A stretch of DNA of 64,000 nt from Macrostomum lignano (lineage: Eukaryota). Numbering within the stretch: position 1 is the stretch's first letter; each line of letters opens with the position of its first letter. The notes below the pieces were generated by a model, which saw only the letters and a list, made by a program, of their open reading frames with translations, searched no databases and was not told the DNA's origin. The translations under genes and the position numbers were made by a program. Below, in pieces: positions 10,675 through 55,900 of the stretch. Where the stretch lies: NCBI GenBank assembly GCA_002269645.1, contig NIVC01001426.1, forward strand, positions 227,094-291,093, given 5' to 3'.

Positions 10675-11039
10675 CAAATAAATGCAATACACGTTTTTTA
10701 ATAAGCAACATGTAGCTAAGCCTTGAAATCTTAAAAAATCTCCTGTCAAACTTCTAACCATAACCCCAACCCTAACCATAACCCCAACCCTAACCATAAC
10801 CCTAAATTGAATATTTTGTTCACGAGTTTTTGCATGATGCTTGCATTATTTTTTGCATGACGCTTCCATAAATATTTTTAATAGGCTACTACATGAGCTA
10901 AGTTATAAGCTACCCTAACCCTAGCCCTAAGCCAAATCTTAACGCTATACCCTGAACCTAACACTAAACCTTGAAACCCTAACACCAATCCTAACACTAA
11001 CCCTACAGCCTGACATTTTCATAAGTTTGTGAAGCGCTT

Positions 11040-12560
11040 ATGCACCAAATTTTTGTGAACAGAATATTCTCAGTGAAATGAAATATTTGAAGCTTTATTT
11101 ATTCCCGGCATAGCACATCACTACAAAGAACGTGCATATACGCGTACCATTTAATACTGGCATACTTTAAGCGTAGGATGATACGAAACTGCGTGAATAA
11201 ATTCGCCGAACTATTAAACATTTCTGTTAGTTTCACGATTATTATACACAGTACATGTACAAAGTAACAGTACTGTTCAACTGTACTGTTACGAGCTACA
11301 ACAAACAAAAAACAACAAACGACCGGTACGTGCTTTTAATTAAATTTTAAACAACCGAAAATTGACGTTCAGCAGTTAAAACAATATTTAAACCAACACA
11401 TGCATTTATTCAAATGATATGATATGATCTTCTGCTGCTAATACGAGCGTAGCAGGTGAAAATTTGCAATGATGTAATAATTAATTAACAAAAGGATAGA
11501 CTGTCGCTTCAGCAGATGGTGCCATCGACAAGCAGCCAGTATAGCTTTAGCAGTACAAAAATGTACATGTATATGCCATCCTGACTACCTGCCGACTCGC
11601 GTCACTGCTCAATTGCATGCATTGGGTGTAAGCAAAGGTAGAGACATTCATTCTCAAACCAAAATTAAGTCGCTCCGCTCTGCTTAAGGCTGCTACAGAG
11701 CTTGACTGCAAATGCTCCTTTTAGAGTCTGGAACCACAGGGTATATAGAGCAGCTCCTATACACCATTCACAAACTCTTTTAGCCCAGTTAAGATGCAGT
11801 CAACCTACTCTCAATGAGGGCTGCTTCATAAATTCCGATTATACATACATGTTTCACCTGCTTATACCTGTACTATTTCTGTTTACTGACTGTATTTTAT
11901 GGTCTGTTCAGCGACTGTATTAGTGACTGCATTATTGTCTGTTTAGAGGCTGTATTGTCTGTTAAACGACTGTATTGTCTGTTTAGAGGCTGTATTGTCT
12001 GTTTAGAGGCTGTATTGTCTGTTAAACGACTGTATTGTCTGTTTAGAGACTGTATTGTCTGTTAAACGACTGTATTGTCTGTTTAGAGGCTGTATTGTCT
12101 GTTAAACGACTGTATTGTCTGTTTAGAGACTGCATTGTCTGTTAAAGGCTGTATTGCCTGTTTAGACATTGTATTGTCTGTTTAGAGACTATATTGTCTG
12201 CTTAAGGCTGTATTGTCTGTTTAGAGGCTGTATTGTCTGTTTAGAGGCTGTATTGTCTGCTTAGAGGCTGTATTGCCTGTTTAGAGGCTGTATTGTCTGC
12301 TTAGAGGCTGTATTGTCTGTTTAGAGGCTGTATTGCCTGTTTAGAGGCTGTATTGCCTGTTTAGGGATTGCATCATTGTCTGTTAAAGGCCTGTATTTAT
12401 TCTGTAATTTCTACTTTAAGTACTGTTACATTTATGTCCTATGAGTATAAGGAGGAACTTACGAAACATTCCTCGTAAATAGGATTTACTCAATGCACTC
12501 TCTCAGGGCTATCAGTTCATTGAGACTCTACGCGACTTTGATTTCACTCTCAGCCATCAG
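11040..12560. repeat. Internal duplicated block, copy 1 (downstream of the RPA gene), with a 20-bp array at about 11935-12385
   Basis: Matches 15545-17735. The core (about 11490-11940) looks identical and both copies give the same 73-aa ORF. Array unit is TGTATTGTCTGTTTAGAGGC. Confidence 0.9.
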
Positions 12561-12599
12561 ACGCTCGGGTCAAAAAAGTGGCGCGCCAACTGTGGCAAC

Positions 12600-14171
12600 T
12601 CACTGATACGAAGTGCTGTTCTGTACGCTGTGATCATCGAACGACATTCTGCTCGACTCATCCTGACCGTCGACACCTCCACTGCGGTGAAACTGACTCC
12701 GGTCATCACCCGTCGACACTCGTCTGTATCGAATCTGCGAGAAGAAAAAATTTATAAGGATATAAAATATGCGTAACAAGAAAGTCCTATTAAGCATGAA
12801 TACATAAAAGCAACACAATAAGTACTGTTCTCTTTGCTATTCAATTTGCGATTTTCAAAATAAATAGCTTAACTGAACACCTGTCTAACCTGGTAACCTA
12901 ACAAACTTTATTATATTTAATCTTAATACTAAAAGTGGTGCGTTGTTTGTCTGTATAATCAACTAAATTTGTAGAAAATCACTCACCTTTTTGCCATTTC
13001 CGAAGTCCCTCACAATTTCCTTCGAGTGTTTGTCATAAAACTCAAACAAGGCAGCAGGCTCCCGAATTATGGTCACACTTTCGTCTCCAATCTCATCAGC
13101 ACCAAGTCCTGGAGTAGGCACTGGAGCGGGCACAGGTTCAAACCGGGTATCGCCTTCCTTTGCATTCCTATACCAGTCAGCCAAGACTCTGGCTTCACCA
13201 TCGTCACTGTTGCATTTTACGTCAGAGTTCGAGCATCCCAACGTGACGGAGCCCGAATACTCCTGCACCTTTGCTCTTCTTATGGACAAAACATCGCCGA
13301 TGTTCCACCTGTCCACTTGAGCTGAGGACGAACCCCAAAACGTGCAGCTTACAGAGCCGAAGGTTCGGTCAACCAAAGTCACTTTGGCTACGTTAACCTT
13401 TTTCCCAGCACGCGTTCGGACTTCTTCAGACGGTTGCCTGGCGTCGATCACTCCAAGCACATCGACGATTCTGATAGTGAAAGGGAGCAAAGGGACTTTT
13501 TTTAACTATTTGCACACTAACTTAAGCATCACATTAGATTTCTATTTGTACACTAACAGGAGCATCATGAAGCTAATAACCCAGGCTTCGTACAGTGTTG
13601 CGATGATAAATATTTTCAAACACAAGACAAACTAACTGTCACCCAAAAACACGATTACATGTACTTTCACTCCGCGATATTTGAGCACTAATACATGACG
13701 AAAACTACTAAATCAATTAGTCACTCACCTGTCCAATCCAGTCTGTTGCAGTTGATTAATGCTAGTGTAATCAATTACTGGATCTCGAGCAACCGGCACT
13801 TCGTTGCTTCTATAGATGAAGCCCTTGGAATCCACGGAAACGGTCATCTCAAGTGGATTGTCCGTACACTTGTACTCTGGCTTGGCAGTCTTCACCATCC
13901 CGCCGGATATGCGAACGGCTTCAGCATCGTTGCATACTTCCCAGATAGCTTGCAAATCCTTACCGAAGACGCTGACTCGCATCTCAGATGAGTCGTCCAC
14001 CAAGATGAACGAAAACACTTGGCCCTGACCTTTGTTGTTATTATACGTGTGAACGTCTTTCAGGTTCGTCACAAGGCCAGTGACAGGCGTAGGCATTTGC
14101 CCAACTGTCAGACCGGCAATCCCATCCTTCTTCGACTTCTTTTTCAAAGGTGACTCTGAATAAGAGGCCAT
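12600..14171 (-). CDS. RPA70-like ssDNA-binding protein (two OB folds), 3 exons, about 353 aa
   Basis: Exons 14171-13729, 13470-12987, 12734-12600; GT-AG introns, phases 2 and 0, total 1062 nt. OB-fold-like segments FSFILVDDSSEMRVSVFG and IVDVLGVID...VTLVDRTFGSVSCTFWG resemble RPA70 DBD-A/B. No stops or frameshifts. Confidence 0.85.
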
Positions 14172-14699
14172 TTTGCACAAAATATTATTCAACAATTGAA
14201 AAAAGAACTGATAAAAAGTATCAATCAAACTTTTTCTAAGCAATGATAAGCTTTAACTGTAAGACAACAAAATTGGCTCAACAAATCACAAGCTATATAT
14301 ATGTAGAAATAAAAGTAGCCACGAAAAAAACACCACCTCCCCTCCAGCCCAGTACATTGTACTCAATTTTGCATTCATTTTTACTTTATTACACAATCTA
14401 ATTGGCTGGACACACAACCCAACCCAATCACTCCAGTGCCCAGCATTAAAGCACACACTGCACCCTCTGATGTACGCTAAGGTCTCCTCACTTTTCTCAC
14501 CTAATCCTTTTGTTTGTTTGCTATCTCGTTTTATGGTGACACAATTCTCACCGACTGACTCAGCAAGTGTAGGCAATACTTTAAGAGTTCGCGGCCGCGT
14601 GTACTTCACTGCACAAACAAAACTTGTATGGCGCGGCTGACTGGTTGAGCCATTTTCGCACCTTCTAAGCCGGGAAAGAAAAATAGGCGACCCTCCTCA

Positions 14700-14900
14700 A
14701 GTCAGGCTGCATGGCCACCAGTACGCTAGACAATTTTTAGGCCAATCGCCGCTCTAAAGCCCCGACCTGCACAACCGACCAATAGGAAGCCTCAGACTTG
14801 TACAGAAAACCACCGTAAGGCTCAGCGAAGCGACGACGCACAACCCATAACCCCTAATTTTATTCGCCCCTACACCTCAGTTTCAGTGCCTATATAGTCT
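14700..14900. promoter_or_regulatory. Candidate divergent promoter region
   Basis: Lies between divergent ATGs (14171 minus, 14995 plus). CCAAT at 14742 and 14779, TATATA at 14891, locally GC-richer. Confidence 0.45.
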
Positions 14901-14994
14901 GATATAGTCTGATTCATATATTTAGAGTCATATATTTCTATATTAGAGTCTCAACAAATCATATTTTCTCAATCAAATCATCAACAAATCAACA

Positions 14995-15460
14995 ATGCAT
15001 ATTACACAAATATTTGGTGGCGGCGGCGGCGGTAGGCGAGGCGGCGGTCAGCGCGGCGGCTGGCAGCGCGGCAGGGGCGGCCCACGCGGAAAGAGCAGTG
15101 AGTACCTTCCTAAGACACTGTAAATCTTGTGCTTTGAGTACATTCGAGTATAGTCTTAAATTTTATCTAATTGTAGCCTGTTACTGACTTTCATGCTACT
15201 CGTATTATTACTGATAAATTTTGCAAAAATTTCCCTTCTTTTAATTGCCAGTCGTTTGTTTCTTCTGTGGAGGCCGCCACCGCGTTGCCAGCTGCAACGC
15301 GATGAAGGCCGCCGCCCGCCTTCTGCAGCAGCAACAGCAGCAGCAACAGCAGCAGCAGCAGCCGCAGCAGCAGCCGCAGCAGCCGCAGCAACAGCAGCAG
15401 CCGCAGCAGCAGCAACAGCAGCCGCAGCAACAGCAGCCGCAGCCAATGAATGAATTGTAA
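14995..15460 (+). CDS. Predicted 103-aa RGG-rich / CCHC zinc-knuckle / polyQ-P protein, 2 exons
   Basis: Exon 1 14995-15097 (MHITQIFGGGGGGRRGGGQRGGWQRGRGGPRGKS), GTGAGT donor, 154-nt intron with pyrimidine tract and CAG acceptor, exon 2 15252-15460 (IVCFFCGGRHRVASCNAMKAAARLL-Q/P tract-PMNEL*). Phase 1 matches. AACAATG start context and AATAAA at 15468. Confidence 0.7.
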
Positions 15461-15544
15461 ATTCCAAAATAAACTATGACTTTTTTGACTTTTGATTAAA
15501 ATCCGCGATAGACTTATTTATTTTTTTGGACTTTTGAAACAATG

Positions 15545-17735
15545 GCGCACCAGTACAAAGTTTTGTGAACAGAATATTCTAATGCCATGAAATATTCAAA
15601 GTATAATTCATTCTCACCATAGCATGTCATGACAAAGAATGACCGTACATACACACTTACCATTTCATACTGGCTTACTTTGAAAGTAGAACAATACGAA
15701 TCTGCATGAATAATTTCGCCGAACTATTAAACATTTCTAAGTTTTACGATTATTATACACAGTACAAAAAACTGTTTTATCCATTTTTAACTGCTATAAC
15801 TAACAAAGAAGCAAACGGCGAATTAAATTTTAAACTATTAACAACCACAAATTGAAGTTTAAAAATTGAAACAAAAGTTAAACAAACACTTGTATTTATT
15901 CAAACGATATATGATCTGCTTCTGACTACTAACGCTGAGCAAGTTTAATATTTCGTACAGATATTGAAAAATGTAATAATTTATTACAAAAGGATAGACT
16001 GTCGCTTCAGCAGATGGTGCCATCGACAAGCAGCCAGTATAGCTTTAGCAGTACAAAAATGTACATGTATATGCCATCCTGACTACCTGCCGACTCGCGT
16101 CACTGCTCAATTGCATGCATTGGGTGTAAGCAAAGGTAGAGACATTCATTCTCAAACCAAAAATTAAGTCGCTCCGCTCTGCTTAAGGCTGCTACAGAGC
16201 TTGACTGCAAATGCTCCTTTTAGAGTCTGGAACCACAGGGTATATAGAGCAGCTCCTATACACCATTCACAAACTCTTTTAGCCCAGTTAAGATGCAGTC
16301 AACCTACTCTCAATGAGGGCTGCTTCATAAATTCCGATTATACATACATGTTTCACCTGCTTATACCTGTACTATTTCTGTTTACTGACTGTATTTTATG
16401 GTCTGTTCAGCGACTGTATTAGTGACTGCATTATTGTCTGTTTAGAGGCTGTATTGTCTGTTAAACGACTGTATTGTCTGTTTAGAGGCTGTATTGTCTG
16501 TTTAGAGGCTGTATTGTCTGTTAAACGACTGTATTGTCTGTTTAGAGGCTGTATTGTCTGTTAAACGACTGTATTGTCTGTTTAGAGACTGCATTGTCTG
16601 TTAAAGGCTGTATTGCCTGTTTAGACATTGTATTGTCTGTTAAACGACTGCATTGTCTGTTTAGAGGCTGTATTGTCTGTTAAACGACTGTATTGTCTGT
16701 TTAGAGGCTGTATTGTCTGTTAAACGACTGTATTGTCTGTTAAACGACTGTATTGTCTGTTAAACGACTGTATTGTCTGTTTAGAGACTGTATTGTCTGT
16801 TTAGAGGCTGTATTGTCTGTTTAGAGACTGTATTGTCTGTTTAGAGGCTGTATTGTCTGTTTAGAGACTGTATTGTCTGTTTAGAGGCTGTATTGTCTGT
16901 TTAGAGACTGTATTGTCTGTTTAGAGGCTGTATTGTCTGTTTAGAGACTGTATTGTCTGTTTAGAGACTGTATTGTCTGTTTAGAGGCTGTATTGTCTGT
17001 TTAGAGACTGTATTGTCTGTTTAGAGACTGTATTGTCTGTTTAGAGACTGTATTGTCTGTTTAGAGGCTGTATTGTCTGTTTAGAGACTGTATTGTCTGT
17101 TTAGAGACTGTATTGTCTGTTTAGAGGCTGTATTGTCTGTTTAGAGACTGTATTGTCTGTTAAGAGGCTGTATTGTCTGTTTAGAGACTGTATTGTCTGT
17201 TTAGAGACTGTATTGTCTGTTTAGAGACTGTATTGTCTGTTTAGAGGCTGTATTGTCTGTTTAGAGACTGTATTGTCTGTTTAGAGACTGTATTGTCTGT
17301 TTAGAGGCTGTATTGTCTGTTTAGAGACTGTATTGTCTGTTTAGAGACTGTATTGTCTGTTTAGAGGCTGTATTGTCTGTTTAGAGACTGTATTGTCTGT
17401 TTAGAGACTGTATTGTCTGTTTAGAGGCTGTATTGTCTGTTTAGAGACTGTATTGTCTGTTAAGAGGCTGTATTGTCTGTTTAGAGACTGTCTGCATAGT
17501 GACTGTATTATTGTCTGTTTATACCTGTACTACTATCTGTTTAGTGACTGCATGATCAGTGGCTGTAGTTTTGTCTGTTAAATGACTGTATATCATGTTC
17601 GTGTAAAACTGTTATAGATGAGTATAAGAAAGAACTTATGAAACATCCCTCGTAAATAGGATTTACTCAATGTACTCTCTCAGGGCTATCAGTTCATTGA
17701 GACTTCACGCGACTTTGATTTCATTCTCTACAGTC
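15545..17735. repeat. Internal duplicated block, copy 2 (downstream of RepHel), with an expanded 20-bp array at about 16435-17490
   Basis: Matches 11040-12560; the array is roughly twice as long or more. Confidence 0.9.
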
Positions 17736-17799
17736 AGACGCCAGACACTTCTCAAACACATCTCTTGGACTTGAACTCACGAATAGCGTCCGAAATTGC

Positions 17800-20700
17800 T
17801 TAGTCTCCAGTCAGCACCTCTGGGTACACCACGTTCCTCGTCTTAGTTCCAGAAGTACGGACACGGACATTAGCAGCGTTCCTCGCTCGCGACAGAGCCG
17901 TATACAGCTGGCCATGAGTGAAGCAACCGACAGCGAGGTCCACGCCAACTGTGTCCAGAGACTGTCCCTGCGACTTGTGGATCGTCAGGCAGAAGCTCGG
18001 CTTCACAGGGAACTGCAGCCGCTTGAAACTGACGGGGAGGTCCGCATTGCTTGGAATCAGCGGGATTCGCGGCAGAAGAATCTCGTCTCCCGTGAACTGG
18101 CCGGCGGCAATCTTGCATCTAAGCACGTTCTCGCCCATCGCGAGTATGATGAGCCGCGTACCATTGCACAATCGTGGCGGGTTGATGTTCCTGAGAAGAA
18201 CTACTGGCATACCCTCCTTTAGCCTCAGCAAGTGAATCGGAAAGTTCGGGGCATCCAGCTGGTTGAGCAACTCAGGCGGGAAGTGCGTAGCGGCATCCTC
18301 ATCGGCCACAGTGTCTATCGAGCGGTACTCCCGCAGGCTTCCGGGGAACATGCCCAGACACGTCTCATTGATGGCATCCACTGAGTCATTGTAAGGCGCC
18401 AGGATCGCTCGGCTTGCAAAGTAGCTGTCTCTCTCCACTGGTTCTTCAAACGATGGGTACACAAAATTGATTAGATCAGTGAGAGGCCCTTCCGCAGAAA
18501 TCACGATCTCGGCTGGCAGAGACACTTTCTCCTCCGCATCCTGCTTCATTGTTCCGGATCCGATCTGTGGAGGGTTAAAATGTCGAATATTTCATAACCT
18601 ATACACACTTTTAAGCATAGACATTCCTAAATGACGCAAACTTAAAAAAATTGAGCTCAAAAACAAATCCGCGTCTAGTGTATCATTGTCAATCATTTAA
18701 TAAACTGATGAAATCAGACTTACCTGCTTGAGTAGCTCGGTGTACATCTGATACGCTACAGAATCGGAACTGCTCAGCATCCGGATGTTTCTCGTCAGGC
18801 GATGCCGTTGGAAGTATTTCCACAGTGAGGATCGGCTAACACACGCCATGACACTGTTAGCACGAGTCCCATGCACCACAACGGGTAGGAGCTGCCGGAA
18901 GTCACCAGCGCACACAAACACCAGTCCGCCAAATGGCGAGTCCTGCTTCCGCACATCTCGCAAGCACCGGTCGACCGCCTCCAAATCCTTCCGGTTTGTC
19001 ATAGAAATCTCGTCCCACACAATTAGACGCGCTGTGCGAAATACAGCAGCTTGTTTGGACTGCACTCCAACAGCGCACACGTCCTTGTTTGAGCGTAATA
19101 CCCGAATTGGTATCTTGAACCTGACATGGAAAAATTTGGGTATCATACAGCAGAGGAAGTATTCACATATTTACTTGTTTAATTATTCGTAAGTTACTAA
19201 TAATTTACAAATTAAATATAAACAACTCACGTGGAATGCGCAGTTTGTCCACCTGGCAACAGAGTCGCTGCGATTCCTGAAGCCGCAACGGCGAGAGCGA
19301 CTTCACCCCGGCTGCGCACGAAGGCCAGCAAAACCTCCAGCAGGAAAGTCTTGCCAGTACCAGCGGGCGCGTCCAGGAAGTGCAAGCCGCCGTTGCCGCT
19401 CACAAGATCCTGAGTCACTGACTTGTACACGTCTTTCTGCTCGTCTGTCAGCATTGGTAAGCGTGCCTCAGTAATCTGCGCTTGCTCAATCGTATCGAAC
19501 TGCATCGGTCCATCTTGAGGCATCACGGAGGCCGCAGGCAAGCCGTACTCTGGCAGGCTTCTCCCACCCATGGAGGTCAGCATGCTCTGCAGCTCGCGGA
19601 GCGCTAGGTCAGTAATCTCCTCGGCACTTAAATCTCGATGGTGGAACCGCAGGTCCTCGCACATATCTTCGGCAAAAGAGCACCAAAGGTCGTTGCCATC
19701 CTCAGGCTCGCCCCATATGAGAATGACAGCCAGAATGTGTCTCAGGGCTCTTGGCATTCTTGACTGAACGGCCTCAGCTAGGCACCGCCGCCAGTGGTCA
19801 TCTCGCTGCAGCAGACCAAGTGCCATGCAAGCAGCCTTGGCGCTCGGATGCACAACGCCGTCCACGGTCTGCAGCGCCTCGAAGCTGGTTGGTCCCTTGA
19901 CTCGCAAAAGAAGCATGCGAACATAAAATAAATCACCAGTTCTTGGGCTCACCGTGTACATGCGTGCAACGTTTGTGTTCCGCACTACACCCGGGTGGCC
20001 ATCGACTTTCGCGCCTCGCTTGGCCCGCCGCCACACTCTTTCACTGGCATGCCACACGAAGTAGGACGGCACCTCCGTGTAGAGCAAGGACCGAGCAAAC
20101 TCGTCAGTACGGCACAGCTTGAAAAATGCTGTCAACGTAGAGTCCCTCGGCGTCCTGGCTCTAGCACTTGCGGTCTGCTCGTTGAAATACACGAGCTGCT
20201 CCTCCGACTTGTGAACGCAGAGCCGGATGACCGCCGGAAATCTGTCATGCACCTGATCAGAAGGTGGGAGAGAAATAATCGCTTTTAAGTTTTTTCTGAA
20301 TACAAAAAGCCACAGTTTTGCAATATTTACTCTTAAAATTTAAAATATTTATTACTTCAAAGCCCAAAATTGTATTCACAGCTTCCATTGGGCCAATGTA
20401 GCGCGCAGACAGATACTCCTTGATTTCATCACGCGGCCTCTCTCCATCGTTTGCCGCTACCGTTTGCGTCGGCTGCTGACTACCCGCACTCTGTTCTGTC
20501 GCTTCAGCAGAATTCTGATTGGCATTGACTTTGAACGTTGCCATGTCGCCGCCCTTCAGCAAGTACTTGATCACGTACTTGACCGACTTTACAGTGGCAC
20601 AAACTTCAACGTTCATGTGGCACGCAAACTGGAGCAACAGTTCAGGGCTATAAGGCACAACCCACCTGTGGTTTAAGGAAAAAAACATTGTCAAACGTTT

Positions 20701-23700
20701 CCAACATAAAATACAAGAGGCACCTAATACTCATGACTCGCCTGTTGTCCATGCGAATGCTGCGGCCTTTGAACAGTTTGTCCACTGTAAATCCACCCAT
20801 CTCAGGCGACAGTCTGCGGTACAGTGGGTAGCCAGTATCGCTGGTCAGCGTCACCTGCTGGAACTCCTTCGGAAAGCCCTTGCTGCATTCGCCATTCTCC
20901 ATGCACGGGCACGCTGGATTGTCCTTGCCACAAGGGCCATGGATCATGTGCGTTTTCACCAGCTCATACAGCACAGGCTGCTGCTGTGGGTCCGGAATCT
21001 CGGCAGACACGATGTCATCGTATCGGTCCGGAGTCACCCGCTGGCCACTCGCTAGCCACAGCAGAAAGTGCACATGGGGGAGACCTAAATTATCAAGAAA
21101 AGTATCAAGACATCTTTCAGTCCAATTATCCGATCTGTATCGAATTTGCATCACACAAACCCACCTGTATTTAGTATCTTTATAACGATATAACTATATA
21201 AATTTCATAAAACATAATACTGAGACTTGTACTCACCACGCTTTTGGTACTCTAGCGAGCAGACGTGCGCAGCCTCTTTCCCATAGCGCTTCGTTAGCTG
21301 GGCCAGCAGAGCTTTCTTCTTCATTTCAAAGACTCGGCTAACAATGTCCGGTCGGTGTTCAGCCCGCTGTCCAGGCAGCAGCTGGGCGCTGATCTCCGGC
21401 CAATTCGGATTGCATGTTGCCGTGACAAACAGGTCCGGCTTACCAAACTTGTGAACATAGGTCATAGCGTCCTGCAGCCTCTCCATCAGGTACCTTGGCC
21501 CGCCAACGAAGCTTGAGGACAGAAGCACATGTGCGGGCTTGCCTATGTCACTCGGATCTCTGTCCGTAGATCTGCCATCAGCTGCAAACAGAGCGTCCCG
21601 CAGACCGCTGTACGTCTCGCTGCGCAGGTCCTGCTGATGGGTCCGCAAATACAGCAGCCTCTCTGCCTCAATCTTTGCACACATGTCCACCAGGTACTGC
21701 TGAAACAACCTTCGGCCATAGTGCAGCACACTGAACTGGCCCGCTCGCACCATGATTTCGCTTGCATAGTATTTCATGGGGTCAGTTTCTTGTCATTACT
21801 CATCCGCAACTCCGGGTGCCAGCCATCTTCGCCATTCGGGAACAGCAGCACATACTCCAGCGGGTCATATGAGCGGTGCGTCTCACTGATTCGCTGAGAA
21901 CCGCCCCCACGCAGTTGAATCACGACGTCCCGACTGGCCGGTGCGTCCTCATTGTCCTCAACGATCAGGATACCGACCTCATTTGCCGTAGGCAAGTTGT
22001 AGCGCCTGATTTTAAACGGAGTTTGTGGGACACAAATTCTGTACAAATTGAATCACGTACTTATTACGCATTTTTGCGAGTTCGAGTTACAATCAAAATT
22101 CATAATCTCATTTTGATTTCGCTTTCGTTTACATTTTTAAATTTCGTTATAACAAACACGCTAACTTACCGAATGTGTTCCCCAGATGGTCGACGGTCAG
22201 GGTGAATCACAATTCGCGCATCTCCCAGCTCTGGGTCTTGGCTAATTCGCTCAGCAGCAGCCTTCAGGCTGCGGACATAGCCGTTGCACTCGTGAAGCAG
22301 CGTCTGCAGCAGCTCCAGTAGTTCCGGCTTCACCTTTTGGCTGAGACTCTGGCGGCTTTCGAGTTCGCGATCATTGAAATACACCTGCCATCCCTGAGCT
22401 TCAGCAGAATCCTCTGCAAACAGCGGCGCCGTGCGGTGATGCATCTGGCCGCTGATGATGAAGCTAGGACACCAGCCTGGCACCAACCGCAGTTTGGCAC
22501 CCAGCGAGGTCAGGTGCAGCGCCGAGTTTTAGCTCCTGATGTTGGCCAGGAACGTGGCACTCAATCTGTGCCGCCCCATGTACAGATCCGCCAGCACTTG
22601 AGGCACGGTGCGGCTGGGCAGCTTTACCTTGCCTTTGGCGCAGCAGAAATTCCTCGTCTCTGCGCGCCAGAGTAGAGCACCGCATTCCTGGCATGCCCTG
22701 TCCATTGGGCCGCACTCATGGGCCGTGGCCTCTGGCCTCGGCATTCTGTCAGGCCTGTGATCGAATTATATGCGTGCATAAATGGTAACTATAATATATA
22801 CTGCCAATATTTGTGAAATATAAAATGTAATATGTAGTTCAGAATAAAAAATTACTGTGACCAGTAGCACAAATAAGCCTACCTATTTTGAGCAGATCCT
22901 GCATCAGAATGACCTGCACCTGCACCTGAACCAGAAAGATCTGCCCTCTGCTCCGTTAAACTCGGCGCCTCTGCATCTGCAACGGGCTCGGAAACTGGCA
23001 GTGGATCAGTCACGCGCAACGACTCATAGTGCTCATGACGTAAAAGGATACGCACAATTGCAGTGGGTGGCTGCACAGTGGACATGCAGTGCTGCAATAC
23101 ACTGCCATTTGCCTGATAAATAACCAGGTCAACATTGAAAAAACGGCTTAAAAGTGGCACGACTTCATCAGGAACATAGGTGCCCTCAGAAAAAGACTCA
23201 TTAATAATGGAATCAGCATTTTCCGGCAAAACAAAACCTTCTTCAATCAATTCTGGCATTACTTGTACTGCACGGCATGTCAGTTCATGCCTTAAAGACG
23301 CTGCATTGGTCTCAAGTGGAGTGCCCTGCAACTGGTCACAGACTGCATGAAAAAAGCAATTTCCATCACCTGGGATCCGAACAACAGTTAGCGTATTAAA
23401 TTGGACCACAGCTGGTGTGGCCAACTCACTACTGTCAAACCTGAAAGATTGAAATTATGTTTAAGACGTTAGACTCCGAAAAAACTTATTATCACATACT
23501 CTAATAATCCAAATATACTAAATCTTAAGAGACTAATTCTCACAAATACAGATTCTGAGCAAAACATTCCTGCAAATACAGTTTCTTAGAAATAAAGATT
23601 CTTAGAAAAACATTTCTATAAATACAGATTCTTAGAAACATACAGATTACAAACAAACAAACATACAGAAATTACAGATTTTGGTGGTTACATACTGATT

Positions 23701-42480: not shown

Positions 42481-42636
42481 GTGTCGCTATAAAATGCTAT
42501 CTTAATGCTAGAAAATGTTACTATCTCTCTCTATATATACTATTTTTCAAATTTTAAATAACCACTAAGTAATTACCGCACAATATCTGTAAAACGCGTA
42601 TTTACGAGCTACATGTACTTATTGGGAGGGGGGGGG

Positions 42637-43343
42637 CAGGGGCGTCGCCACCGAGGGTAGGGGACAGGGGGGATATGTCCGACCCTAGAAAAAACTATGG
42701 GGGAACATGCCGATGCTTTGTGTCCCCCCCAACCTTGTGAGCCGTTGTGGAAATCAATAATTTTGCTTGAGGGCTTGTCTGCGGCGCAAAAATGAGTGTC
42801 TGCGGCGCTAAAATGAGTGTCTGCGGCGCTAAAATGAGTGCCTGTGGCGCCAAAATGAGTGCCTGCGGCGCTAAAATGAGTGTCTGCGGCGCTAAAATGA
42901 GTGTCTGCGGCGCTAAAATGAGTGTCTGCGGCGCTAAAATGAGTGTCTGCGGCGCCAAAATGAGTGCCTGTGGCGCCAAAATGAGTGCCTGCGGCGCTAA
43001 AATGAGTGTCTGCGGCGCTAAAATGAGTGTCTGCGGCGCTAAAATGAGTGCCTGCGGCACCAAAATGAGTGTCTGCGGCGCCAAAATGAGTGCCTGTGGC
43101 GCCAAAATGAGTGCCTGCGGCGCTAAAATGAGTGTCTGCGGCGCTAAAATGAGTGTCTGCGGCGCTAAAATGAGTGCCTGCGGCACCAAAATGAGTGCCT
43201 GCGGCGCTAAAATGAGTGCCTGTGGCGCTAAATTGAGTGCCTGCGGTGCCAAAATGACGCTGACAAGACCGATTTTTTAAATAGTGTACATGCAGGATTT
43301 TCGGCATTGTCCCCCCACCATCAAATCCATGGCGACACCCCTG
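42637..43343. mobile_element. Small TIR element with an internal 21-bp array (GTCTGCGGCGCTAAAATGAGT)
   Basis: Termini CAGGGGCGTCGCCA / TGGCGACACCCCTG; array 42775-43255. No TSD recognised. Confidence 0.65.
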
Positions 43344-43544
43344 GATCTTAAGTGCAAGAGATAAACGAGTTGATGAATATTTTGCATCTGTTGGACGGTG
43401 AATTCGAGCTCGATAATTTTTCATACTTTTTGTAGCAAGTCTACTCTGATGATAATGAGTTGTATCTATCTATCTAGGTATTTTTCTATCAATGATATTG
43501 AATTCGAAAAAATCGATTTCTATATTTCTCCTTTGTGTCATAAG

Positions 43545-45899: not shown

Positions 45900-47065
45900 C
45901 AAGTCAAGTTGATTTAAGTTGCCGATATTTCGAATTAGGTAAATTCTTCGTCAGGGCAAGTGAAAAGTAGCGACAAGTGGTGTTGTAAAAGTTATTAAAT
46001 AGGCGGGTTAGAGGGGAGAGAGAGTAGACAGGTAGATAGAGAGCGTACGGTATGTACACTTGGTGTGAGTCGATAAAACACTATTAGAGTTGAAAATGCA
46101 AAATAAAAAACAGTGCACAAATAAAGTGAACCGCACGTGGGCTGCAGCGATCCTACACACGAAATAAATAATGGAATGGTGCGACTGCACCGGTGTCTAA
46201 AAAGGGTGTCTAAAAAGAAAGAGTGACTCTAAGCACTTTACAAAATGGACCTCAATAAATAAAAAAGGTGAACAGGCCCTCAAAAACTAAAAAGAGCAAT
46301 TGTACGATAAGCAAAAGAGTAAAAGTAAAAAGTGTAATAAAAAAGAACAGGGTGTCAAGAAACAATAGAAATGTAGATGCAGAATAAATGCTGAGAATAT
46401 ACAAAAGCTGTGCTTGGGCTAGCGATGAGAATAAAAAAAATTCTAAGAAAGGAGCAATAAAAGGCTTGGTAGGTACCGGCACGGTCTGACAAAGGTAAGT
46501 AGTAGGGAAAGTGAAGTAAAAAATCAAAAGGAAAAAAAATAAAAAAAAATTCAATCAGTGGTGGACTCCAGTCGACTGGGACAGAGCAGCTGCCGGAGGT
46601 TCCGCCCTTTGGTGTTGGCGGGCAGCACCGGGGCCTCGCAGCACCGGGCCACGCGGTCCTTCACCGCGGCCACCAGGGCGTCCGACCTCGCACAATGGGG
46701 CAGGATCAGCGGGATGGCCGGGTTGTGCAGCGTGCCGGCAAGCTCGTTGACGCCGTGCGGGGTTCGAGTCTTTAACACCTCGATGAGCTTGGCCTCGTGG
46801 CGCTGCCGCCGCTCGTTCGCTCTGGGTCCCGTGCCGTCACGAGACCAGATGCCGGTGAAGGCGAAGTCCGCCAGACTGTGGCCATCACTGGTGAAATGGC
46901 GGGCCACCGGAGTGTCACGGGCGTGCCGGATGTCGCCGATGTGCGCCAGCATGCGGCCGCGGATGCTGTTGGCGGTCTCGCCTACGTAGACCGTGTGGTC
47001 GCACCGGCGGCAGAACACGGCATAGACGGCGTTGGTGGCGTTGCAGTCGATCCGCTGACTGATGA

Positions 47066-47066
<1 letters not shown>
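45900..47066 (-). mobile_element. Penelope-like element 3' portion (GIY-YIG C-terminus, 3' UTR, hammerhead)
   Basis: 46551-47066 translates as IDCNATNAVYAVFCRRCDHTVYVGETANSIRGRMLAH...PVARHF...EAKLIEVLKTRTPHGVNE, typical of the PLE GIY-YIG endonuclease; no RT seen in this copy. Confidence 0.88.
45919..45959 (-). ncRNA. Minimal type I hammerhead ribozyme
   Basis: TTGCC-CTGACGA-A-GAATT-tacct-AATTC-GAAA-TATC-GGCAA: stems I and II pair perfectly, core intact, AUC cleavage triplet, palindromic ATAT in place of stem III. Confidence 0.85.
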
Positions 47067-47676
<610 letters not shown>

Positions 47677-48649
47677 AGTTGTAGCTGCCCTCTCATTTCG
47701 GCAGCAACAGCAAATGTTACGCTTGTAGTCCCTGTAAGGCTGTAGTCTGTACGTCTCACTCTTTCTTTCATGGATCCGTCCCTTTGGTGGATGGGACATA
47801 TTTTGCGCACTGAATTTTTTATTTATTAAAACGCCAGCAAGCGCAATACTGAATTGCTGCATGGTGAAAATTTTCCACCTCCTTGAGAAGCAGAAGAACA
47901 AAGATGAAGCGTCACTGGTCCGTTTGTACGAGTACACGCTCCTATGACTAGTTGTCTCCATTAATTTGTTGCTCATCGTACAGCAGCGTCGTACAGTCTT
48001 GAGGCACAAGCAGGTGTACTTTTTGTAGAGTCGAACCAAGGACCACTAGTAGTATATCTACGTACCTGCATGCAGGACTTTTATTGCATGAATACGCCCG
48101 TACTATTGATTCAATAAGGAACAAAACAAAAATTTCAGCTAATGCAGTGCACTTGTGAGGTTATTTACAACTTTAGCCATATGAAATTAAAAGAGAATAA
48201 AATGAAAATGAAAAGTTCACTGCAGAACTATATAAAATACCACAGAGAAGTATGATGCGTATGCTAATTCAAAAGAATGGTTATCTTCGCTGTCCCAGAT
48301 CAAATGCAATCCACCAGTGGTGCAATGCTATCCACCAGACGAAGTTAATCTACAGAATTGGCGTTCCATGCGGTACTGCAGAGAAGCACGCACAGTCATG
48401 CATGGCAAAATCCAGTTGAGTGGGCGGAAGGCCACCATTGGCTTCTTAGCTCATTATAGTTTGACTCTCCCCGCTAATTCTCAACTCAATTCATGGTAAA
48501 TTTATTGCAAACAAAATGTAGAGGCAGTGTAACGAGTGCTTGCACGCAGAGTTGATAAAATATAAGAATTCATCGTGCTATAGTATAATTATTTTGCTAA
48601 TATTTTAAAAACTAAAGTCACATAAGACCTACTATGAGGCAATAAACGA

Positions 48650-50169: not shown

Positions 50170-51706
50170 TTAAGCTATTGCTCTCGATCTGTAACTCGTT
50201 AAGGTAACTTTGGCTACTCGAAAAATATAAGCTATTATATTTGTGATGGGAAGCTGCATTGGATACTCAATGAGGCTATTGTTGGTTATGGCAGCGCTCA
50301 GTCGACTCGACACATGATCCTGATCGGTTGCTTTTGCAATGCGATCCAGCTGAATCACTCCAGGACTGTCAGCTTCCATCAGTCCGATTGATGCTGTCTG
50401 AGCATTCGGGTTGTCGGACACGAGTCGGGATAGCGAGTCGGACTTCATGAGCTTAGACGGTCGGTATTGTATTTCATAGTCATAGGTGGCCAGGATGATT
50501 GCCCATCGCTGCAATCGAGCTGAAACTCTGGTTGGCAGCTCCTTGTCTGGTGTGAATATGAATGTGAGCGGTCGGTTATCAGAGTGAAACTCCGGCCGTA
50601 CAAGAATCGATGACATCTTTTGAATGCGACAAACCAATACAAGTCTCGTTTTTCTTCCTTAGCCGGTTGAGCGGCTTGTTAAGTGCAGCTAAGTTTCTGA
50701 TGAACTTTCCGCTGAAGTTAACGAGACCCAGGAAGGACTCAAGTTCACTGACATTCTGTGGTGGTGTCATGTCCTGGATTGCCTTCACTTTGGCTGGATC
50801 TGGTTTCATTTGATCTCCTTCCAGTAAATACCCCAGGAATTTTATTGACCTTTTGTGGAATTCACTTTTCGCTATGTTGATCTTTAATCCTTGATGGTTC
50901 AGTCGGTGCAAGACTTCCTTCTCTCGACCTGCCAACTGATCTACGCTTTTGCCGGATATCAATATGTCGTCCACATAGGCAATGACACCTGGTGTTCCTC
51001 GTAGGACTTGGCTGATGTACCGCTGGAAGATCGCTGGCGCTGTCTTCACTCCAAACGGTAGCCTATTGAAGGCAAACATTCCGAATGGTGTCGACATGAC
51101 TGTGAGCTCTTTTGAAGTGTCATCCAGTAGAATCTGGTGATAAGCCTTCTCTAAGTCTGTAAATCTGGCTGCCGGCCACAGTTGCAATTACTTCATCAGA
51201 AGCCGGCATCGGATAAGAATCATGGACAAGATGTGGGTTTATTGTCACTCTGAATCCATGCAAATTCTCAACTTTTCAGAAGGTTTCTTGACCACGACGA
51301 TTGGTGAAGCCCATTCACTGAACTTGACTGATTTGATTATTCCTTCATTGAGCAGTTGATCGATTTCTTCCTTTACTCCATTTCTTAGTGCAAAGGGCAT
51401 TGGTTTTGGTTTGCAGTGAATCGGAGTGTCCCCTCTTTGATCTTTAAGAGTCACTCGTCGAAATTCACCTGACCTTGCTGCATACGCTTTTTGATCAACA
51501 GAATTGAGTGTGAAGTTTAGCAATTGTCCCAACCAACAAGAACAAATTAGTTTCTCTGAGATTCCACGATAGGACTCGCAACTGTACTCTAATTCGGTTT
51601 CAAGAGCTCCAAAAACCTTCATCTGGGCATCGGCATCTGTTTTCAGTACCGTGTTAGTAGGCGTTAGTCTTTGGTGGCCGAGATCAACCGGTTGATTCCA
51701 ATTCAT
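50170..51706 (-). mobile_element. Degraded Ty3/Gypsy pol remnant (RT, RNase H)
   Basis: WASPIVVVKK..KLRICMD; DLEKAYHQI...RLPFG...AYVDDILI; ITD...PL...RLQRWAIILATYDYEIQYRP, split by frameshifts. Confidence 0.9.
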
Positions 51707-52945: not shown

Positions 52946-55900
52946 TGTTAAAGAAATAATCAAGTCTAATTGATCTGAGGGTTAGACTTTAACAAAAAAA
53001 CAGGTAAATGAGCCCTGTGGCTAAATTATTGCTTATATATTAAATTAAATCGATGTTCTCTCTCTCCAACTCTCTAACTCATCAACGCCTCACGCACATC
53101 AACCCCACCCCAACACACTCTGAGACGGGGACCGCCAAGTGTACACTGGCGACGCTACACATAGCAGAGGGTCGGTACGCAGGCACTCCAAATCCAACAC
53201 ACTCCCCCTAATGATGCTTCATCATTACAGTACTTAACATTGATATTCGAAAAAGGAAACTCGCTATTAACTTAAATGAAATTAAACGAAACGAATAGCA
53301 AAAAACAAATGAACAACAAAAAACGCTCCAACATTACAACAGACTTGATGACTAAAAATGTGACACACCATCACCAGAGTACTGAGTTAACGAAAAAGTA
53401 GGAACAAAGGGAAAACGAAACTCAAAAAAATCCAATCAGCGCTAAGGAGCTCAAAAGGTAAGATTGAAAGGGAGTGAAAATTACTGCGAACTAAAACTAA
53501 ACAGAAACTCGAAACAACGATTAGAACAGTCATTGAAAGTCAGTTACTTAAGTTCATTCAGTCACAGCTTCCAGCAAAATCAGGTTCTCCACCGGTCGGC
53601 GAATCAAGCATCTCCTGGGACCGCGGCCAGGTCTGGGCGCGACTCGAACCGTTGCAGATCTCACCGCCCCGTCTCGGCCAGGATGCACCGACTCGATGAC
53701 ACCGGTACACCAGGTAAGCCTCGGCTGCCCGGCCTCACCTTTCACCAGGACGATGTCGCCGGCCGTCGCTTCTCGAGTTACGCCATGCTTGGGACTTAGA
53801 TTATGTTCTCGCAGGCTGGTCAGATACTGTCGCTCCCAGCAGTCCCAGAAGGCTTGCAGTCTGGCGCGCATTCGCCTCAGCAGTGTTGGCAACGGCAGCA
53901 GGAGCTCGGGCGTACCGCTAGAAGTTGGCTCCGCCGTCAGCCGTTGCAGGACCAGAAAGTGCGCCGGCGTCAGGACTTCTCCGTTGGTTTCGGCATCCAC
54001 GTAGAGTAGAGGCCGACTGTTGAGCACCGCTTCCACCTCCATTAGCACTGTCCGCAGTTCGTCCAGCGTCAGGGTTGCGTTGAGGATGGTCTTGCGCAAA
54101 GCCAGCTTGATGTCCCTCATCAGTCGCTCCCAGAAGCCTCCTTGCCACGGTGCGCGTTCGACGATGAATTGCCAGGTGATTTTCCTGGTGGCGCAGAAGT
54201 CTTGAACTTGTCGACTCTCCGACGCCTGAAGTATTTTGGCAGCCTTGGTGAATGTCTTGGCGTTGTCACTGATGAGATTGGGAATTCCTCTCCGAGCACA
54301 GAACCGTCGGAGGGCTCGCAGGAAGGTCTCGGTCGTCAAGTCGCTCACCAGTTCCAGGTGAAGGGCTCGCGTGGCCGCACAGGTGAAAACCAGGATATAG
54401 CCTTTCTCGATCTCTGTGTCCTCCATCAGTTTGACAGGTCCGCAGTAGTCGAGTCCGCACCACTCAAAGGCTCTCCCAGACTTCACGCGTGCTTCAGGTA
54501 AGGCTGGGATTTGCTTCACTGCATATGGTAGTCCTTGAAGACGTCTGCAGACAAAGCAACTTCTCAGGATCGACTTGACTCGCTGTCTTCCTCTGATTAG
54601 CCAGAATCTCTCTCGCAGCTTACAAAGAGTGCTGGGCACTCCCCCGTGCAGAACCTTGGCGTGAGCGTCCCAGATGAGAAGAAGCTCCAGGTGTGACTTG
54701 CTCGGGATCAGAATCGGACAGTCAACCTCGGCAGAGGCGTTGGACTCCTTCAATCGACCTTGGCTTCGGAGAATACTCTTGTTGTCGAGAAAAAGATTCA
54801 ACTGCCTGCTGAGATCTGTACTGGCCGCTGACTCCTGAATGTGAGCAATTTCGGCTTGAAAACTCCGTCTCTGCACTTCTCGCAGCCAGCGCTCTTCAAC
54901 TTCAAGGACTTCTGCTGCAGCCAGTGGTCCCACTCGCTCCTCCCCCGCTGCAGAAGTTCTAGCTTGCAGGTTTCTGACGAAGCGTAGGACATAGGCTGTC
55001 ACCCGAATCAGCTTGATCCAGGATGAGAAGTTCGTGTCATTGAGAACTTCCTGTAGACTGATGTCAGGACCGGCTTCAGTTAGCAGAACAACTGGACGGT
55101 TCACTTGTGTCTTTTGCTCCTCGGCAACTGCCGCTGTCGGTAAGCTGAGAAAGGATTGGTCGGGCCAATCGTCAGGAGGTCGTGCCAGCCAGTCTGGACC
55201 GTGCCACCAGCTGTCGTCCGCCTTCAACTTGCTCGCTGATGTTCCTCGAGATGCAACGTCCGCCGGATTCTCCTCGCCTGGGACATGTCTCCAGGCATCC
55301 TCTGGCACCAGGCGGCGGATCTCCGTCACCCGATTATGAACAAAGAGCTTCCAGGGTCTGTGCTGCCGGATCCAGTAGAGCGTGTCGGCACTGTCTGTCC
55401 AGCAAAACACCTGGCGAACCTGAGGATACTGACTCATGGATGATGTCAACAGTCTGGCGAGTATCAAGGCACCCAGGAGTTCGAGCCGAGGAATTGAAAG
55501 AACCGACAGTGGAGCCACTCTCGCCTTGGCGGCCACCAGGTTGCAGCTGACGGAACCATCGGTGTACTGCACTCGCAGGTAAAGACACGCCGCATAGCAT
55601 TTGATTGACGCATCACAGAACCCATGCAGCTGTATCTCCTCGACCTCCTTCGTCGCCGAAAGCACCAACCTTGGAACTTGAAATCGACCTGCCAGCATCT
55701 CCTGCAACCACTTCAGCCACTGCTGCTTAATCGGCTCCTTTAGCGGGCAGTCCCAAGCGATCTTTTCAACGCACAGCTTCTGGAACATCGATTTCGGCAA
55801 CGTAAGCAGCGGAACCAGGAAGCCCAGAGGATCGTAGACACGGGCCAGCAGCTGTAGCACGACACGCTTGGAGGGCGACGCCTTGAGCAAATCTTCTGGC

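What the first reader, a model, noticed from the sequence alone, without database searches (positions are those of the whole stretch)
14995..15460. Hidden spliced gene in the Helitron: RGG box + CCHC zinc knuckle + polyQ (103 aa)
The ORF track misses it because exon 1 is short. A GTGAGT...CAG intron joins a Gly/Arg-rich exon in phase to C-x2-C-x3-H-x4-C and a ~38-residue Q/P tract. Both exons are GC-rich in AT-rich surroundings, the CAG run is mixed with CAA/CCG as in coding polyQ, and start context, TATA and AATAAA are all in place. RGG plus knuckle plus prion-like tail is the layout of nucleic-acid chaperones and condensate proteins. The knuckle spacing equals the first knuckle of the BEL Gag in this window (CPFCETEHAPEKC). 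Hypothesis: a nucleocapsid-like factor that binds Helitron ssDNA circles or RNA, or a silencing antagonist. I know of no such Helitron accessory gene.
Basis: partly seen in the sequence, partly recalled or inferred. Interest (0 to 1): 0.9.

Follow-up and report, generated by a model that had tools for sequence, protein, structure and literature searches.

The report
Spliced zinc-knuckle mini-gene beside a Helitron
A 600-bp two-exon mini-gene in a Macrostomum flatworm genome would encode a 103-residue RGG / zinc-knuckle / polyQ protein; the gene structure looks real and a M. lignano protein model has the same splice junction, but nothing shows that it belongs to the neighbouring Helitron's own gene set or that the protein is made.

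Summary
ATG 14995, donor GTGAGT at 15098, acceptor CAG at 15251 and stop at 15460 give a 103-aa product: a tri-RGG tract, CFFCGGRHRVASC (CX2CX3HX4C), and a 40-residue Q/P tail. About 58% of the CDS is GGC- or CAG-type repeat, so ORF length alone proves little. The combined signals are rare in this window. The intron looks like the Helitron's real introns.

An exhaustive HMMER search found one relative, UniProt A0A1I8JBM3 (Macrostomum lignano). It starts MHITQIF…, carries the same GKS|IVCFFC junction and an identical knuckle, then runs into a reverse-transcriptase fragment. So there are at least two copies, and an independent model has the predicted splice.

The "Helitron accessory gene" reading is not supported:
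- The gene is antisense to the Helitron genes.
- It lies just outside a duplicated 3' repeat module.
- It is absent from a 10-kb-flanked M. lignano sister copy, which diverges at the helicase stop codon.
- It is absent from a related family where an RPA-like gene follows the helicase directly.

The x3 knuckle spacing is a known retroelement Gag/ORF1 variant.

Verdict: probably a real, lineage-restricted mini-gene or a recent copy of one. It is a passenger or neighbour of transposons, and expression and function are unproven.

The parts
14742..14783 (+). Two CCAAT motifs (14742-14746 and 14779-14783) upstream of the TATA-like element. Possible promoter elements.
   Evidence: Read from the sequence. 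Inference only.
14891..14896 (+). TATATA, 99-104 nt upstream of the ATG. It lies within a short 10-bp direct repeat (ATATAGTCTG x2).
   Evidence: TATAWA occurs 103 times per 128 kb of both strands.
14995..15097 (+). Exon 1: ATG, then MHITQIF, then a Gly/Arg tract (tri-RGG: RGGGQRGGWQRGRGG), ending ...PRGKS plus the first base of codon 35.
   Evidence: MHITQIF and PRGKS are identical in A0A1I8JBM3.
15019..15081 (+). GGC-type trinucleotide / 15-nt minisatellite that encodes the RG tract.
   Evidence: TRF and repeat family D2.
15098..15251 (+). Predicted phase-1 intron: GTGAGTAC...TTGCCAG, 154 nt, GC 0.325. Read-through stops after 8 codons.
   Evidence: It has the same style as the Helitron's real introns (GTGAGT/GTAAGT donors, about 65-150 nt, AT-rich).
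15252..15460 (+). Exon 2: IVCFFCGGRHRVASCNAMKAAARLL, a 40-residue Q/P tract, MNEL, then TAA.
15257..15295 (+). CX2CX3HX4C zinc-knuckle-like motif CFFCGGRHRVASC.
   Evidence: Identical in A0A1I8JBM3.
15325..15443 (+). (CAG)n array with CAA and CCG interruptions = the Q/P tail.
15468..15473 (+). AATAAA, 8 nt after the stop, followed by T-rich sequence.
   Evidence: AATAAA occurs 96 times per 128 kb.
15541..17741 (.). Context: module X'-satellite-Y' (20-bp tandem array at about 16373-17591). It is duplicated at 11040-12564 with 86-90% identity. Its left boundary lies about 80 bp from the candidate's stop.
17800..23424 (-). Context: Helitron genes on the minus strand (OTU, Helitron_like_N, PIF1 helicase), split by short introns.
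   Evidence: 84-92% nt identity to M. lignano NIVC01000958.1.
12963..14171 (-). Context: RPA-like OB-fold gene, two ORF blocks, about 316 aa if spliced 13729/13470. It is divergent from the candidate, with 823 bp between the two ATGs.

Best explanation
This is a real, or very recently real, compact two-exon transcription unit restricted to Macrostomum. It is not a chance ORF and not a core Helitron gene.

It encodes a 103-aa, mostly disordered protein in three parts: an RG/RGG tract, one retroelement-type CX2CX3HX4C zinc knuckle, and a Q/P-rich tail. At least two copies exist in Macrostomum genomes.

In this window the unit is a passenger or neighbour of transposons. It is wedged between the repeat module that follows a Helitron helicase and a divergently oriented RPA-like gene.

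If translated, the product would most likely act as a small binder of single-stranded nucleic acid. The Arg/Gly tract and the Zn knuckle would contact RNA or ssDNA, as in nucleocapsid and CNBP-type proteins. The Q/P tail would give self-association.

Shown: the ORF, the signals, the junction shared with an independent protein model, the motif, and absence from sister Helitrons.

Inferred: transcription, translation, zinc and nucleic-acid binding, and origin of the knuckle from a retroelement gag/ORF1.
For: - The gene structure is complete and in phase.
- The intron has the donor form, length and AT-richness of the bona fide Helitron introns in the same window.
- Such two-exon constructs are rare: 16 in 128 kb of both strands, at least 5 of them real. 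TATA and AATAAA each occur about once per 1.3 kb, so having all of them in place is not expected by chance.
- GC drops from 0.64 in the non-repeat knuckle segment to 0.325 exactly at the predicted acceptor.
- CX2CX3HX4C is expected 0.055 times per window.
- Exhaustive phmmer found UniProt A0A1I8JBM3 of M. lignano, with the same start and the same GKS|IVCFFC junction.
- Of the first 48 residues of A0A1I8JBM3, 44 are identical to the candidate. All differences are substitutions or in-frame indels inside the RG tract.
- The x3 knuckle spacing, with an aromatic residue after Cys1 and Gly after Cys2, is found in real Gag/ORF1 proteins.
Against: - No transcript, ribosome or peptide evidence could be reached.
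- 58% of the CDS is trinucleotide repeat. Such repeats keep frames open and change length in threes without any selection.
- There is no Pfam, PDB or other family match.
- Only one related protein cluster was found among 1.84 billion representatives.
- That relative loses similarity right after the knuckle and continues as an RT fragment. The tail is therefore not conserved, and that model may be an ab initio chimera.
- NCBI M. lignano proteins are in the searched collection (P0004). None of them carries this knuckle.
- Identity of the non-repeat parts between the two copies may only reflect recent duplication.
Confidence: 0.55

Rival explanations
1. This is non-coding DNA that only looks like a gene. 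Two decaying microsatellites, (GGC)n and (CAG)n, keep frames open. The splice-like and promoter-like signals are fortuitous. The UniProt model is a gene-finder artefact that extended an RT fragment upstream to the nearest good ATG and splice sites.
For: - 182 of 312 nt are repeat.
- Several frames on both strands are open.
- There is no family match.
- There is no homolog outside one M. lignano model.
- That model is chimeric with RVT_1.
Against: - The joint occurrence of ATG context, consensus donor, Y-tract acceptor, in-phase join, a rare CCHC pattern, TATA and AATAAA is far above the window's base rates.
- The composition steps at the exact intron borders in non-repeat sequence.
- The start, junction and knuckle are conserved in a second copy.
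Confidence: 0.25
2. This is a relic or captured fragment of a retroelement gag/ORF1 or of a host CCHC gene, carried in TE-rich DNA. It is a pseudogene copy whose functional parent, if any, lies elsewhere. The knuckle is real by descent, but this locus makes no functional protein.
For: - The knuckle spacing and auxiliary residues match the BEL Gag, LINE ORF1 and Ty3 gag variants.
- Both known copies lie next to transposon sequence: Helitron parts here and an RT fragment in A0A1I8JBM3.
- Helitrons are known to capture gene fragments with their introns (established knowledge; e.g. PMC3288121, listed).
Against: - No capsid-like or pol sequence flanks it.
- BLASTP against the window's own BEL Gag matches only motif residues, E 0.097.
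- The unit is complete from promoter-like signals to the poly(A) signal, not a fragment.
Confidence: 0.15
3. One reading: a dedicated Helitron accessory gene, a nucleocapsid-like factor that serves the element's ssDNA or RNA intermediates or counteracts silencing.
For: - It lies between the helicase and the RPA-like gene.
- It is paired head-to-head with the ssDNA-binding RPA-like gene, 823 bp between the two ATGs.
- If the X'-satellite-Y' module is a secondary insertion or duplication, the gene would sit in the helicase-to-RPA spacer.
Against: - It is absent from the sister copy L001, whose homology ends at the helicase stop codon with no RPA-like gene or candidate in 10 kb.
- It is absent from the related family L002, where about 400 bp separate the helicase from the RPA-like gene.
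- It is antisense to all Helitron genes.
- The left ends of both module copies abut unrelated DNA. That looks like an element boundary with the candidate outside it.
- The other copy is linked to an RT fragment and not, as far as can be seen, to a Helitron.
Confidence: 0.08

Closest known systems
UniProt A0A1I8JBM3 (Macrostomum lignano, 'Reverse transcriptase domain-containing protein', 114 aa)
   Same: Same start MHITQIF, an RG tract, the same exon1/exon2 junction GKS|IVCFFC and an identical knuckle through ASCN. 44 of its first 48 residues are identical to the candidate.
   Different: After the knuckle it continues as an RVT_1 fragment instead of AMKAAARLL plus polyQ. The RG tract differs by 3 substitutions and 3 in-frame indels. 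Its DNA and evidence type could not be reached.
Retroelement nucleocapsid knuckles with CX2CX3HX4C spacing (BEL/Pao Gag, second knuckle of Jockey/I/Nimb-type LINE ORF1, some Ty3 gags)
   Same: Same spacing, an aromatic residue after Cys1, Gly after Cys2 and basic flanks. Examples: CPFCETEHAPEKC and CEFCQMKHHPSLC in this window's BEL Gag, CFQCGGKHKVRDC in P0125 with Retrotrans_gag, and literature cases.
   Different: It is a single knuckle with no capsid-like domain and no adjacent pol. It is spliced and has a polyQ tail. Similarity beyond the motif residues is not significant.
Cellular RGG-plus-knuckle nucleic-acid binders (CNBP/ZCCHC type; from general knowledge)
   Same: An Arg/Gly tract next to a CCHC knuckle, and small size, which predict single-strand RNA/DNA binding.
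   Different: Those proteins use CX2CX4HX4C and several knuckles and match Pfam zf-CCHC. This one has x3 spacing and gives no HMM match.
Helitron-borne extra genes (RPA-like, OTU) and Helitron-captured host gene fragments
   Same: It is located among Helitron sequences next to an RPA-like gene. Captured fragments can keep their introns.
   Different: RPA-like and OTU genes recur across copies and families and lie on the element's sense strand. This gene does neither in the copies available.

Membership tests
Classical zinc knuckle zf-CCHC (Pfam PF00098) | Spacing C-x2-C-x4-H-x4-C | tested here: not met
   The motif is C-x2-C-x3-H-x4-C.
Classical zinc knuckle zf-CCHC (Pfam PF00098) | HMM match at or above the gathering score | tested here: inconclusive
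   No zf-CCHC hit even at E<=10. But the three knuckles of the window's BEL Gag and the four of the Ty3-type gag P0125 are also missed, so the test has no power here.
Retroelement Gag/ORF1 nucleocapsid | CCHC knuckle of a spacing used by Gag/ORF1 proteins | tested here: met
   The x3 spacing is shared with the BEL Gag, LINE ORF1 proteins and P0125.
Retroelement Gag/ORF1 nucleocapsid | Knuckle embedded in a gag/ORF1 with a capsid-like domain, next to pol | tested here: not met
   There is no gag, protease or RT domain in or around the ORF. The RT tail of A0A1I8JBM3 has no counterpart in the window.
Retroelement Gag/ORF1 nucleocapsid | Significant sequence similarity to a known Gag beyond the Cys/His residues | tested here: not met
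   BLASTP against the window's BEL Gag gives E 0.097 over 15 residues. The phmmer hit to P0125 rests on summed repeats of the motif.
Helitron accessory gene | Lies within the element's termini | tested here: inconclusive
   The termini could not be defined. The candidate lies just outside the left boundary of the duplicated X-satellite-Y module.
Helitron accessory gene | Present in other copies of the same family | tested here: not met
   L001 (84-92% nt identity over OTU-Rep-Hel) has no match within 10 kb downstream of the helicase. Only one sister copy was available.
Helitron accessory gene | Present in related families | tested here: not met
   In L002 the helicase stop is at 5344 and the RPA-like gene starts at 5778, with no candidate on either strand.
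RGG/RG-motif protein (tri-RGG definition, from general knowledge) | RGG(x0-4)RGG(x0-4)RGG | tested here: met
   RGGGQRGGWQRGRGG at residues 15-29. A0A1I8JBM3 has only a di-RGG.
Expressed spliced protein-coding gene | Canonical start, splice and poly(A) signals with an in-phase ORF | tested here: met
Expressed spliced protein-coding gene | Junction seen independently | tested here: met
   The same GKS|IV junction is in A0A1I8JBM3. Whether RNA evidence lies behind that model is unknown.
Expressed spliced protein-coding gene | Transcript or peptide evidence | not testable with these tools
   No Macrostomum RNA data were reachable. Exact look-ups of the product and of 15 other window ORFs found nothing.
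PolyQ / prion-like domain protein | Long Q-rich tract conserved among homologs | tested here: not met
   A tract of 33 Q and 7 P is present, but it is absent from the only homolog.

The most novel reading that the evidence does not exclude
The mini-gene is a passenger mobilised by a flatworm Helitron. It would be a spliced, nucleocapsid-like RGG/knuckle gene captured between the helicase and the RPA-like gene and transcribed head-to-head with the RPA-like gene. Its product would act on the element's single-stranded intermediates or transcripts. A milder variant of this reading: the A0A1I8JBM3 locus is an intron-less chimera of the spliced mRNA and a LINE. That would prove splicing in vivo and show LINE-mediated spread of the gene.
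Probability: 0.1. Interest if true: 0.65.

Novelty: new member of a known kind. Interest (0 to 1): 0.35.

Why it matters
If it is expressed, this is a very small, lineage-specific protein built from three nucleic-acid-binding or condensate-type modules, with a knuckle of retroelement type. That would make it a candidate case of a gene born from, or shuttled by, transposons in a regeneration model flatworm. If it were shown to travel inside Helitrons, it would add a new class of Helitron cargo. As things stand it is mainly an annotation point: a short spliced gene that ORF scans miss, half of which already sits inside a mis-named UniProt model.

Tried and rejected
- **Word-indexed protein search** with residues 1-62 found nothing. 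This negative is unreliable, because the exhaustive phmmer search later found A0A1I8JBM3, which shares long exact words with the query.
I used the contiguous 30-aa knuckle segment instead.
- **Exact look-ups** of the 103-aa product, the unspliced 42-aa product, exon-2 and antisense ORFs, and Helitron, RPA-like and BEL ORFs found none in the collection.
- **PDB sequence search** found nothing.
- **Pfam** gave only polyQ noise.
- **Rfam** on 10-18 kb gave only sub-threshold hits to the CAG repeat.
- **The metagenome scan** with back-translated peptide words gave no relative.
- **RPA-like homologs** P0001-P0003 are UniRef-only, and the look-up tried (P0001) found no contig on record.
- **DNA of A0A1I8JBM3** is not on record.
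- **Sensitive blastn** of 12565-15540 against L001 and L002 found only RPA-like coding similarity.
- **Terminal 100-200 nt of the X and Y modules** have no match in the sister loci.
- **No terminal or inverted repeats** bracket the candidate.
- **Other phmmer hits:** P0124 and P0126 are repeat-summed spurious matches.
- **Antisense ORFs** (poly-Ala and poly-Leu, 15156-15467 and 15191-15430) are by-products of the CAG repeat.
- **Derivation from the window's BEL Gag** was considered and rejected, because similarity is limited to motif residues.

Full report
**What is in the sequence**

The feature is exactly as described.
- An ATG at 14995 (context caacaATGc) opens a 103-nt exon.
- CAG|GTGAGTAC at 15097/15098 is a consensus donor.
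- The intron is 154 nt and AT-rich (GC 0.325). It has CTGAC/CTGAT branch-like sites and a pyrimidine tract ending TTGCCAG|T at 15251/15252.
- The second exon runs to TAA at 15458-15460.
- The join is in phase and gives 103 aa: MHITQIF, a Gly/Arg tract that meets the tri-RGG pattern, KSIV, CFFCGGRHRVASC, NAMKAAARLL, 40 residues of Q/P (33 Q, 7 P), and MNEL.
- TATATA lies about 100 nt upstream of the ATG.
- AATAAA lies 8 nt after the stop and is followed by T-rich sequence.
- The knuckle is C-x2-C-x3-H-x4-C, not the classical x4 form.

**Is it more than chance?**

Points that weaken the case:
- 182 of the 312 coding bases are GGC-type or CAG-type repeat.
- Several frames on both strands are open across exon 2.
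- ORF length and part of the GC contrast therefore carry little weight. Indels in such repeats preserve the frame without selection.

Points that strengthen it:
- A scan of the whole window for ATG-ORF / GTRAGT / pyrimidine-rich YAG / in-frame ORF constructs of at least 90 aa finds only 16 donor-acceptor pairs on both strands.
- At least five of those 16 are true introns of the Helitron and of the RPA-like gene.
- The real Helitron introns use GTGAGT or GTAAGT donors (one is also GTGAGTAC), are about 65-150 nt long and are AT-rich, like this one.
- TATAWA and AATAAA each occur about once per 1.3 kb per strand, so finding both at the right distances is unlikely by chance.
- The non-repeat knuckle segment 15252-15324 has GC 0.64, and the drop to 0.325 falls at the predicted acceptor.
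- CX2CX3HX4C is expected 0.055 times per window in composition-preserving shuffles. It occurs three times, twice in the BEL Gag and once here.

**Organism and surroundings**

The window is from Macrostomum, a free-living flatworm.
- The last helicase exon (17800-18549, minus strand) is 94% identical in protein to M. lignano BOX15_Mlig024103g1.
- The RPA-like ORF hits only M. lignano proteins, at 57-64% identity.

On the minus strand lie an OTU domain, Helitron_like_N and a PIF1-type helicase, spanning 23424-17800 and split by short introns.

Further left, also on the minus strand, is an RPA-like OB-fold gene at 14171-12963.

The candidate is on the plus strand between them. It is antisense to all of these genes and head-to-head with the RPA-like gene.

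A module that I call X-satellite-Y (a 20-bp tandem array plus unique flanks) occurs twice in the same orientation, at 11040-12564 and 15541-17741, with 86-90% identity.
- One copy follows the helicase stop by 59 bp.
- The other follows the RPA-like gene by about 400 bp.
- The left ends of the two copies abut unrelated DNA: degenerate CCCTAA repeats in one case and the candidate's 3' end in the other.
- That pattern is what an element boundary looks like, and it places the candidate about 80 bp outside it.

I could not define Helitron termini. So I cannot say whether the candidate sits in a second, RPA-carrying element, in an interrupted helicase-to-RPA spacer, or in ordinary DNA between two elements.

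**Sister copies of the Helitron**

One M. lignano genomic copy could be fetched with 10-kb flanks (L001, NIVC01000958.1).
- It aligns at 84-92% from the 5' region down to the helicase stop codon. There the similarity ends.
- Its next 10 kb hold other tandem arrays and retroelement debris. They contain no satellite of this type, no RPA-like gene and no trace of the candidate by blastn or tblastn.

A related family was recovered from Logan assemblies (L002-L007; about 75% nt identity, helicase 86% aa identity).
- In L002, the only one of these contigs that extends far enough past the helicase, the RPA-like gene lies about 400 bp after the helicase on the same strand, with nothing like the candidate in between.

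The candidate is therefore not a conserved component of this Helitron lineage, as far as two comparisons can show.

**Relatives of the peptide**

Several searches gave nothing:
- The word-indexed search.
- Exact look-ups.
- PDB.
- Pfam.
- A metagenome scan.

The exhaustive HMMER search with the 30-aa knuckle segment found one true relative among 1.84 billion representatives. It is P0127 = UniProt A0A1I8JBM3 of M. lignano, 114 aa.
- It reads MHITQIFGGGRRRGGSGRRGGWQRGSGPRGKSIVCFFCGGRHRVASCN and then continues as a reverse-transcriptase fragment (RVT_1).
- That fragment has no counterpart in the window.
Unspliced DNA would instead read GKSSEYLPKTL-stop.
- Of its first 48 residues, 44 are identical to the candidate.
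- The three substitutions and three indels are all in-frame and all inside the RG tract.

This shows three things:
- There is at least one more copy of the unit in Macrostomum.
- An independent model uses the same start and the same splice, or the locus is an intron-less chimera of the spliced mRNA with a LINE.
- The polyQ tail is not part of what is shared.

Three limits apply:
- Its DNA is not on record, so I cannot tell which of these cases holds or whether RNA evidence backs the model.
- One search missed this protein, so that negative should not be trusted.
- No NCBI M. lignano protein carries the knuckle, although that proteome is in the collection.

**The knuckle**

The x3 spacing is a recognised variant in retroelement nucleic-acid-binding proteins.
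- Two of the three knuckles of the window's BEL Gag have it.
- It is the second knuckle of Jockey-type and Nimb-type LINE ORF1 proteins (PMC2330053 and PMC3391268).
- It recurs in a Ty3-type gag, P0125, as CFQCGGKHKVRDC.

The candidate also has the usual aromatic residue after Cys1, Gly after Cys2 and basic neighbours.

Pfam's zf-CCHC models miss all of these control knuckles too. The lack of a Pfam hit is therefore not evidence against a knuckle.

Direct similarity to the BEL Gag is confined to the motif residues (E 0.097), so descent from a particular element is not shown.

**Most likely nature and mechanism**

I judge it about 55% likely that this is a genuine, lineage-restricted, spliced mini-gene, or a very recent copy of one, that is a passenger or neighbour of transposons.

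If it is translated, the RG/RGG tract and a zinc-bound knuckle would bind single-stranded RNA or DNA in the manner of nucleocapsid and CNBP-type proteins. The Q/P tail would promote self-association. All of this is inference from motif composition.

The rivals are:
- A gene-like accident of two microsatellites plus a gene-finder artefact (0.25).
- A dead relic or captured fragment of a gag/ORF1 or host CCHC gene (0.15).

**Comparison with what is known, and novelty**

The candidate works like, but cannot be filed in, three groups:
- The zf-CCHC family (spacing not met).
- Retroelement Gag/ORF1 (no capsid-like domain and no pol context).
- Helitron accessory genes (not conserved in sister or related elements).

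Its only homolog is a chimeric, mis-named UniProt model.

It is best described as a new, orphan member of the broad class of small RGG-plus-knuckle proteins. Interest is moderate to low unless the genome-wide copy map ties it to Helitrons or RNA data prove expression.

The decisive data are the Macrostomum genome assemblies and RNA-seq, and they lie outside the collections available here.

Noticed in passing
window 11040-12564 and 15541-17741: A composite module is present twice in direct orientation at 86-90% identity: a unique part of about 830 bp, a 20-bp satellite array (unit TGTTTAGAGGCTGTATTGTC; 0.5 and 1.2 kb), and a unique part of about 125 bp. One copy follows the Helitron helicase and the other follows the RPA-like gene. 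It may be the 3' module of two juxtaposed rolling-circle elements or an internal duplication.
   Followed up: partly
window 10750-11010: Degenerate telomere-like CCCTAA/CCATAA repeats directly abut the left end of the left module copy.
   Followed up: no
window 17800 / L001 10804 / L002 5344: Three related Helitrons (the window copy, an M. lignano genomic copy and a Logan-assembled family) lose all similarity to one another immediately after the helicase stop codon. Each carries a different downstream region: tandem arrays in two, an RPA-like gene in the third. L001 also has a 4.3-kb insertion at the point matching window 18542/18544.
   Followed up: partly
window 12963-14171 (minus strand): The RPA-like gene is much more diverged from its L002 counterpart (51% and 39% aa identity for the two OB blocks) than the helicase is (86% aa identity). 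This hints that the RPA-like gene and the helicase in this window belong to different element lineages.
   Followed up: no
window 53554-59031 (minus strand): An uninterrupted 1825-codon BEL/Pao-type polyprotein ORF (DUF1759 gag domain, three knuckles, aspartic protease, and further domains). It looks like a young element.
   Followed up: partly
window 50170-51706 (minus strand): A fragmented LTR-retroelement pol: RVT_1 plus a weak RT_RNaseH hit (E 0.0096), broken into three ORFs.
   Followed up: partly
window 63333-63926 (+) and 46551-47810 (-): ORFs with GIY-YIG-like nuclease motifs. The Pfam GIY-YIG match is weak for the first. The second is judged by eye only. Both may be remnants of Penelope-like elements. 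The second is embedded in long GA-rich simple sequence (44.5-47.8 kb) that makes spurious long ORFs in six frames.
   Followed up: partly
window 42609-43424: A tandem repeat produces long repetitive ORFs on both strands. No domain was assigned.
   Followed up: no
tool behaviour, versus 44: The word-indexed homolog search returned nothing for the RG-rich 62-aa query. Yet the collection holds a protein identical to the query over long stretches. Negatives from that tool on low-complexity queries should be treated with caution.
   Followed up: yes
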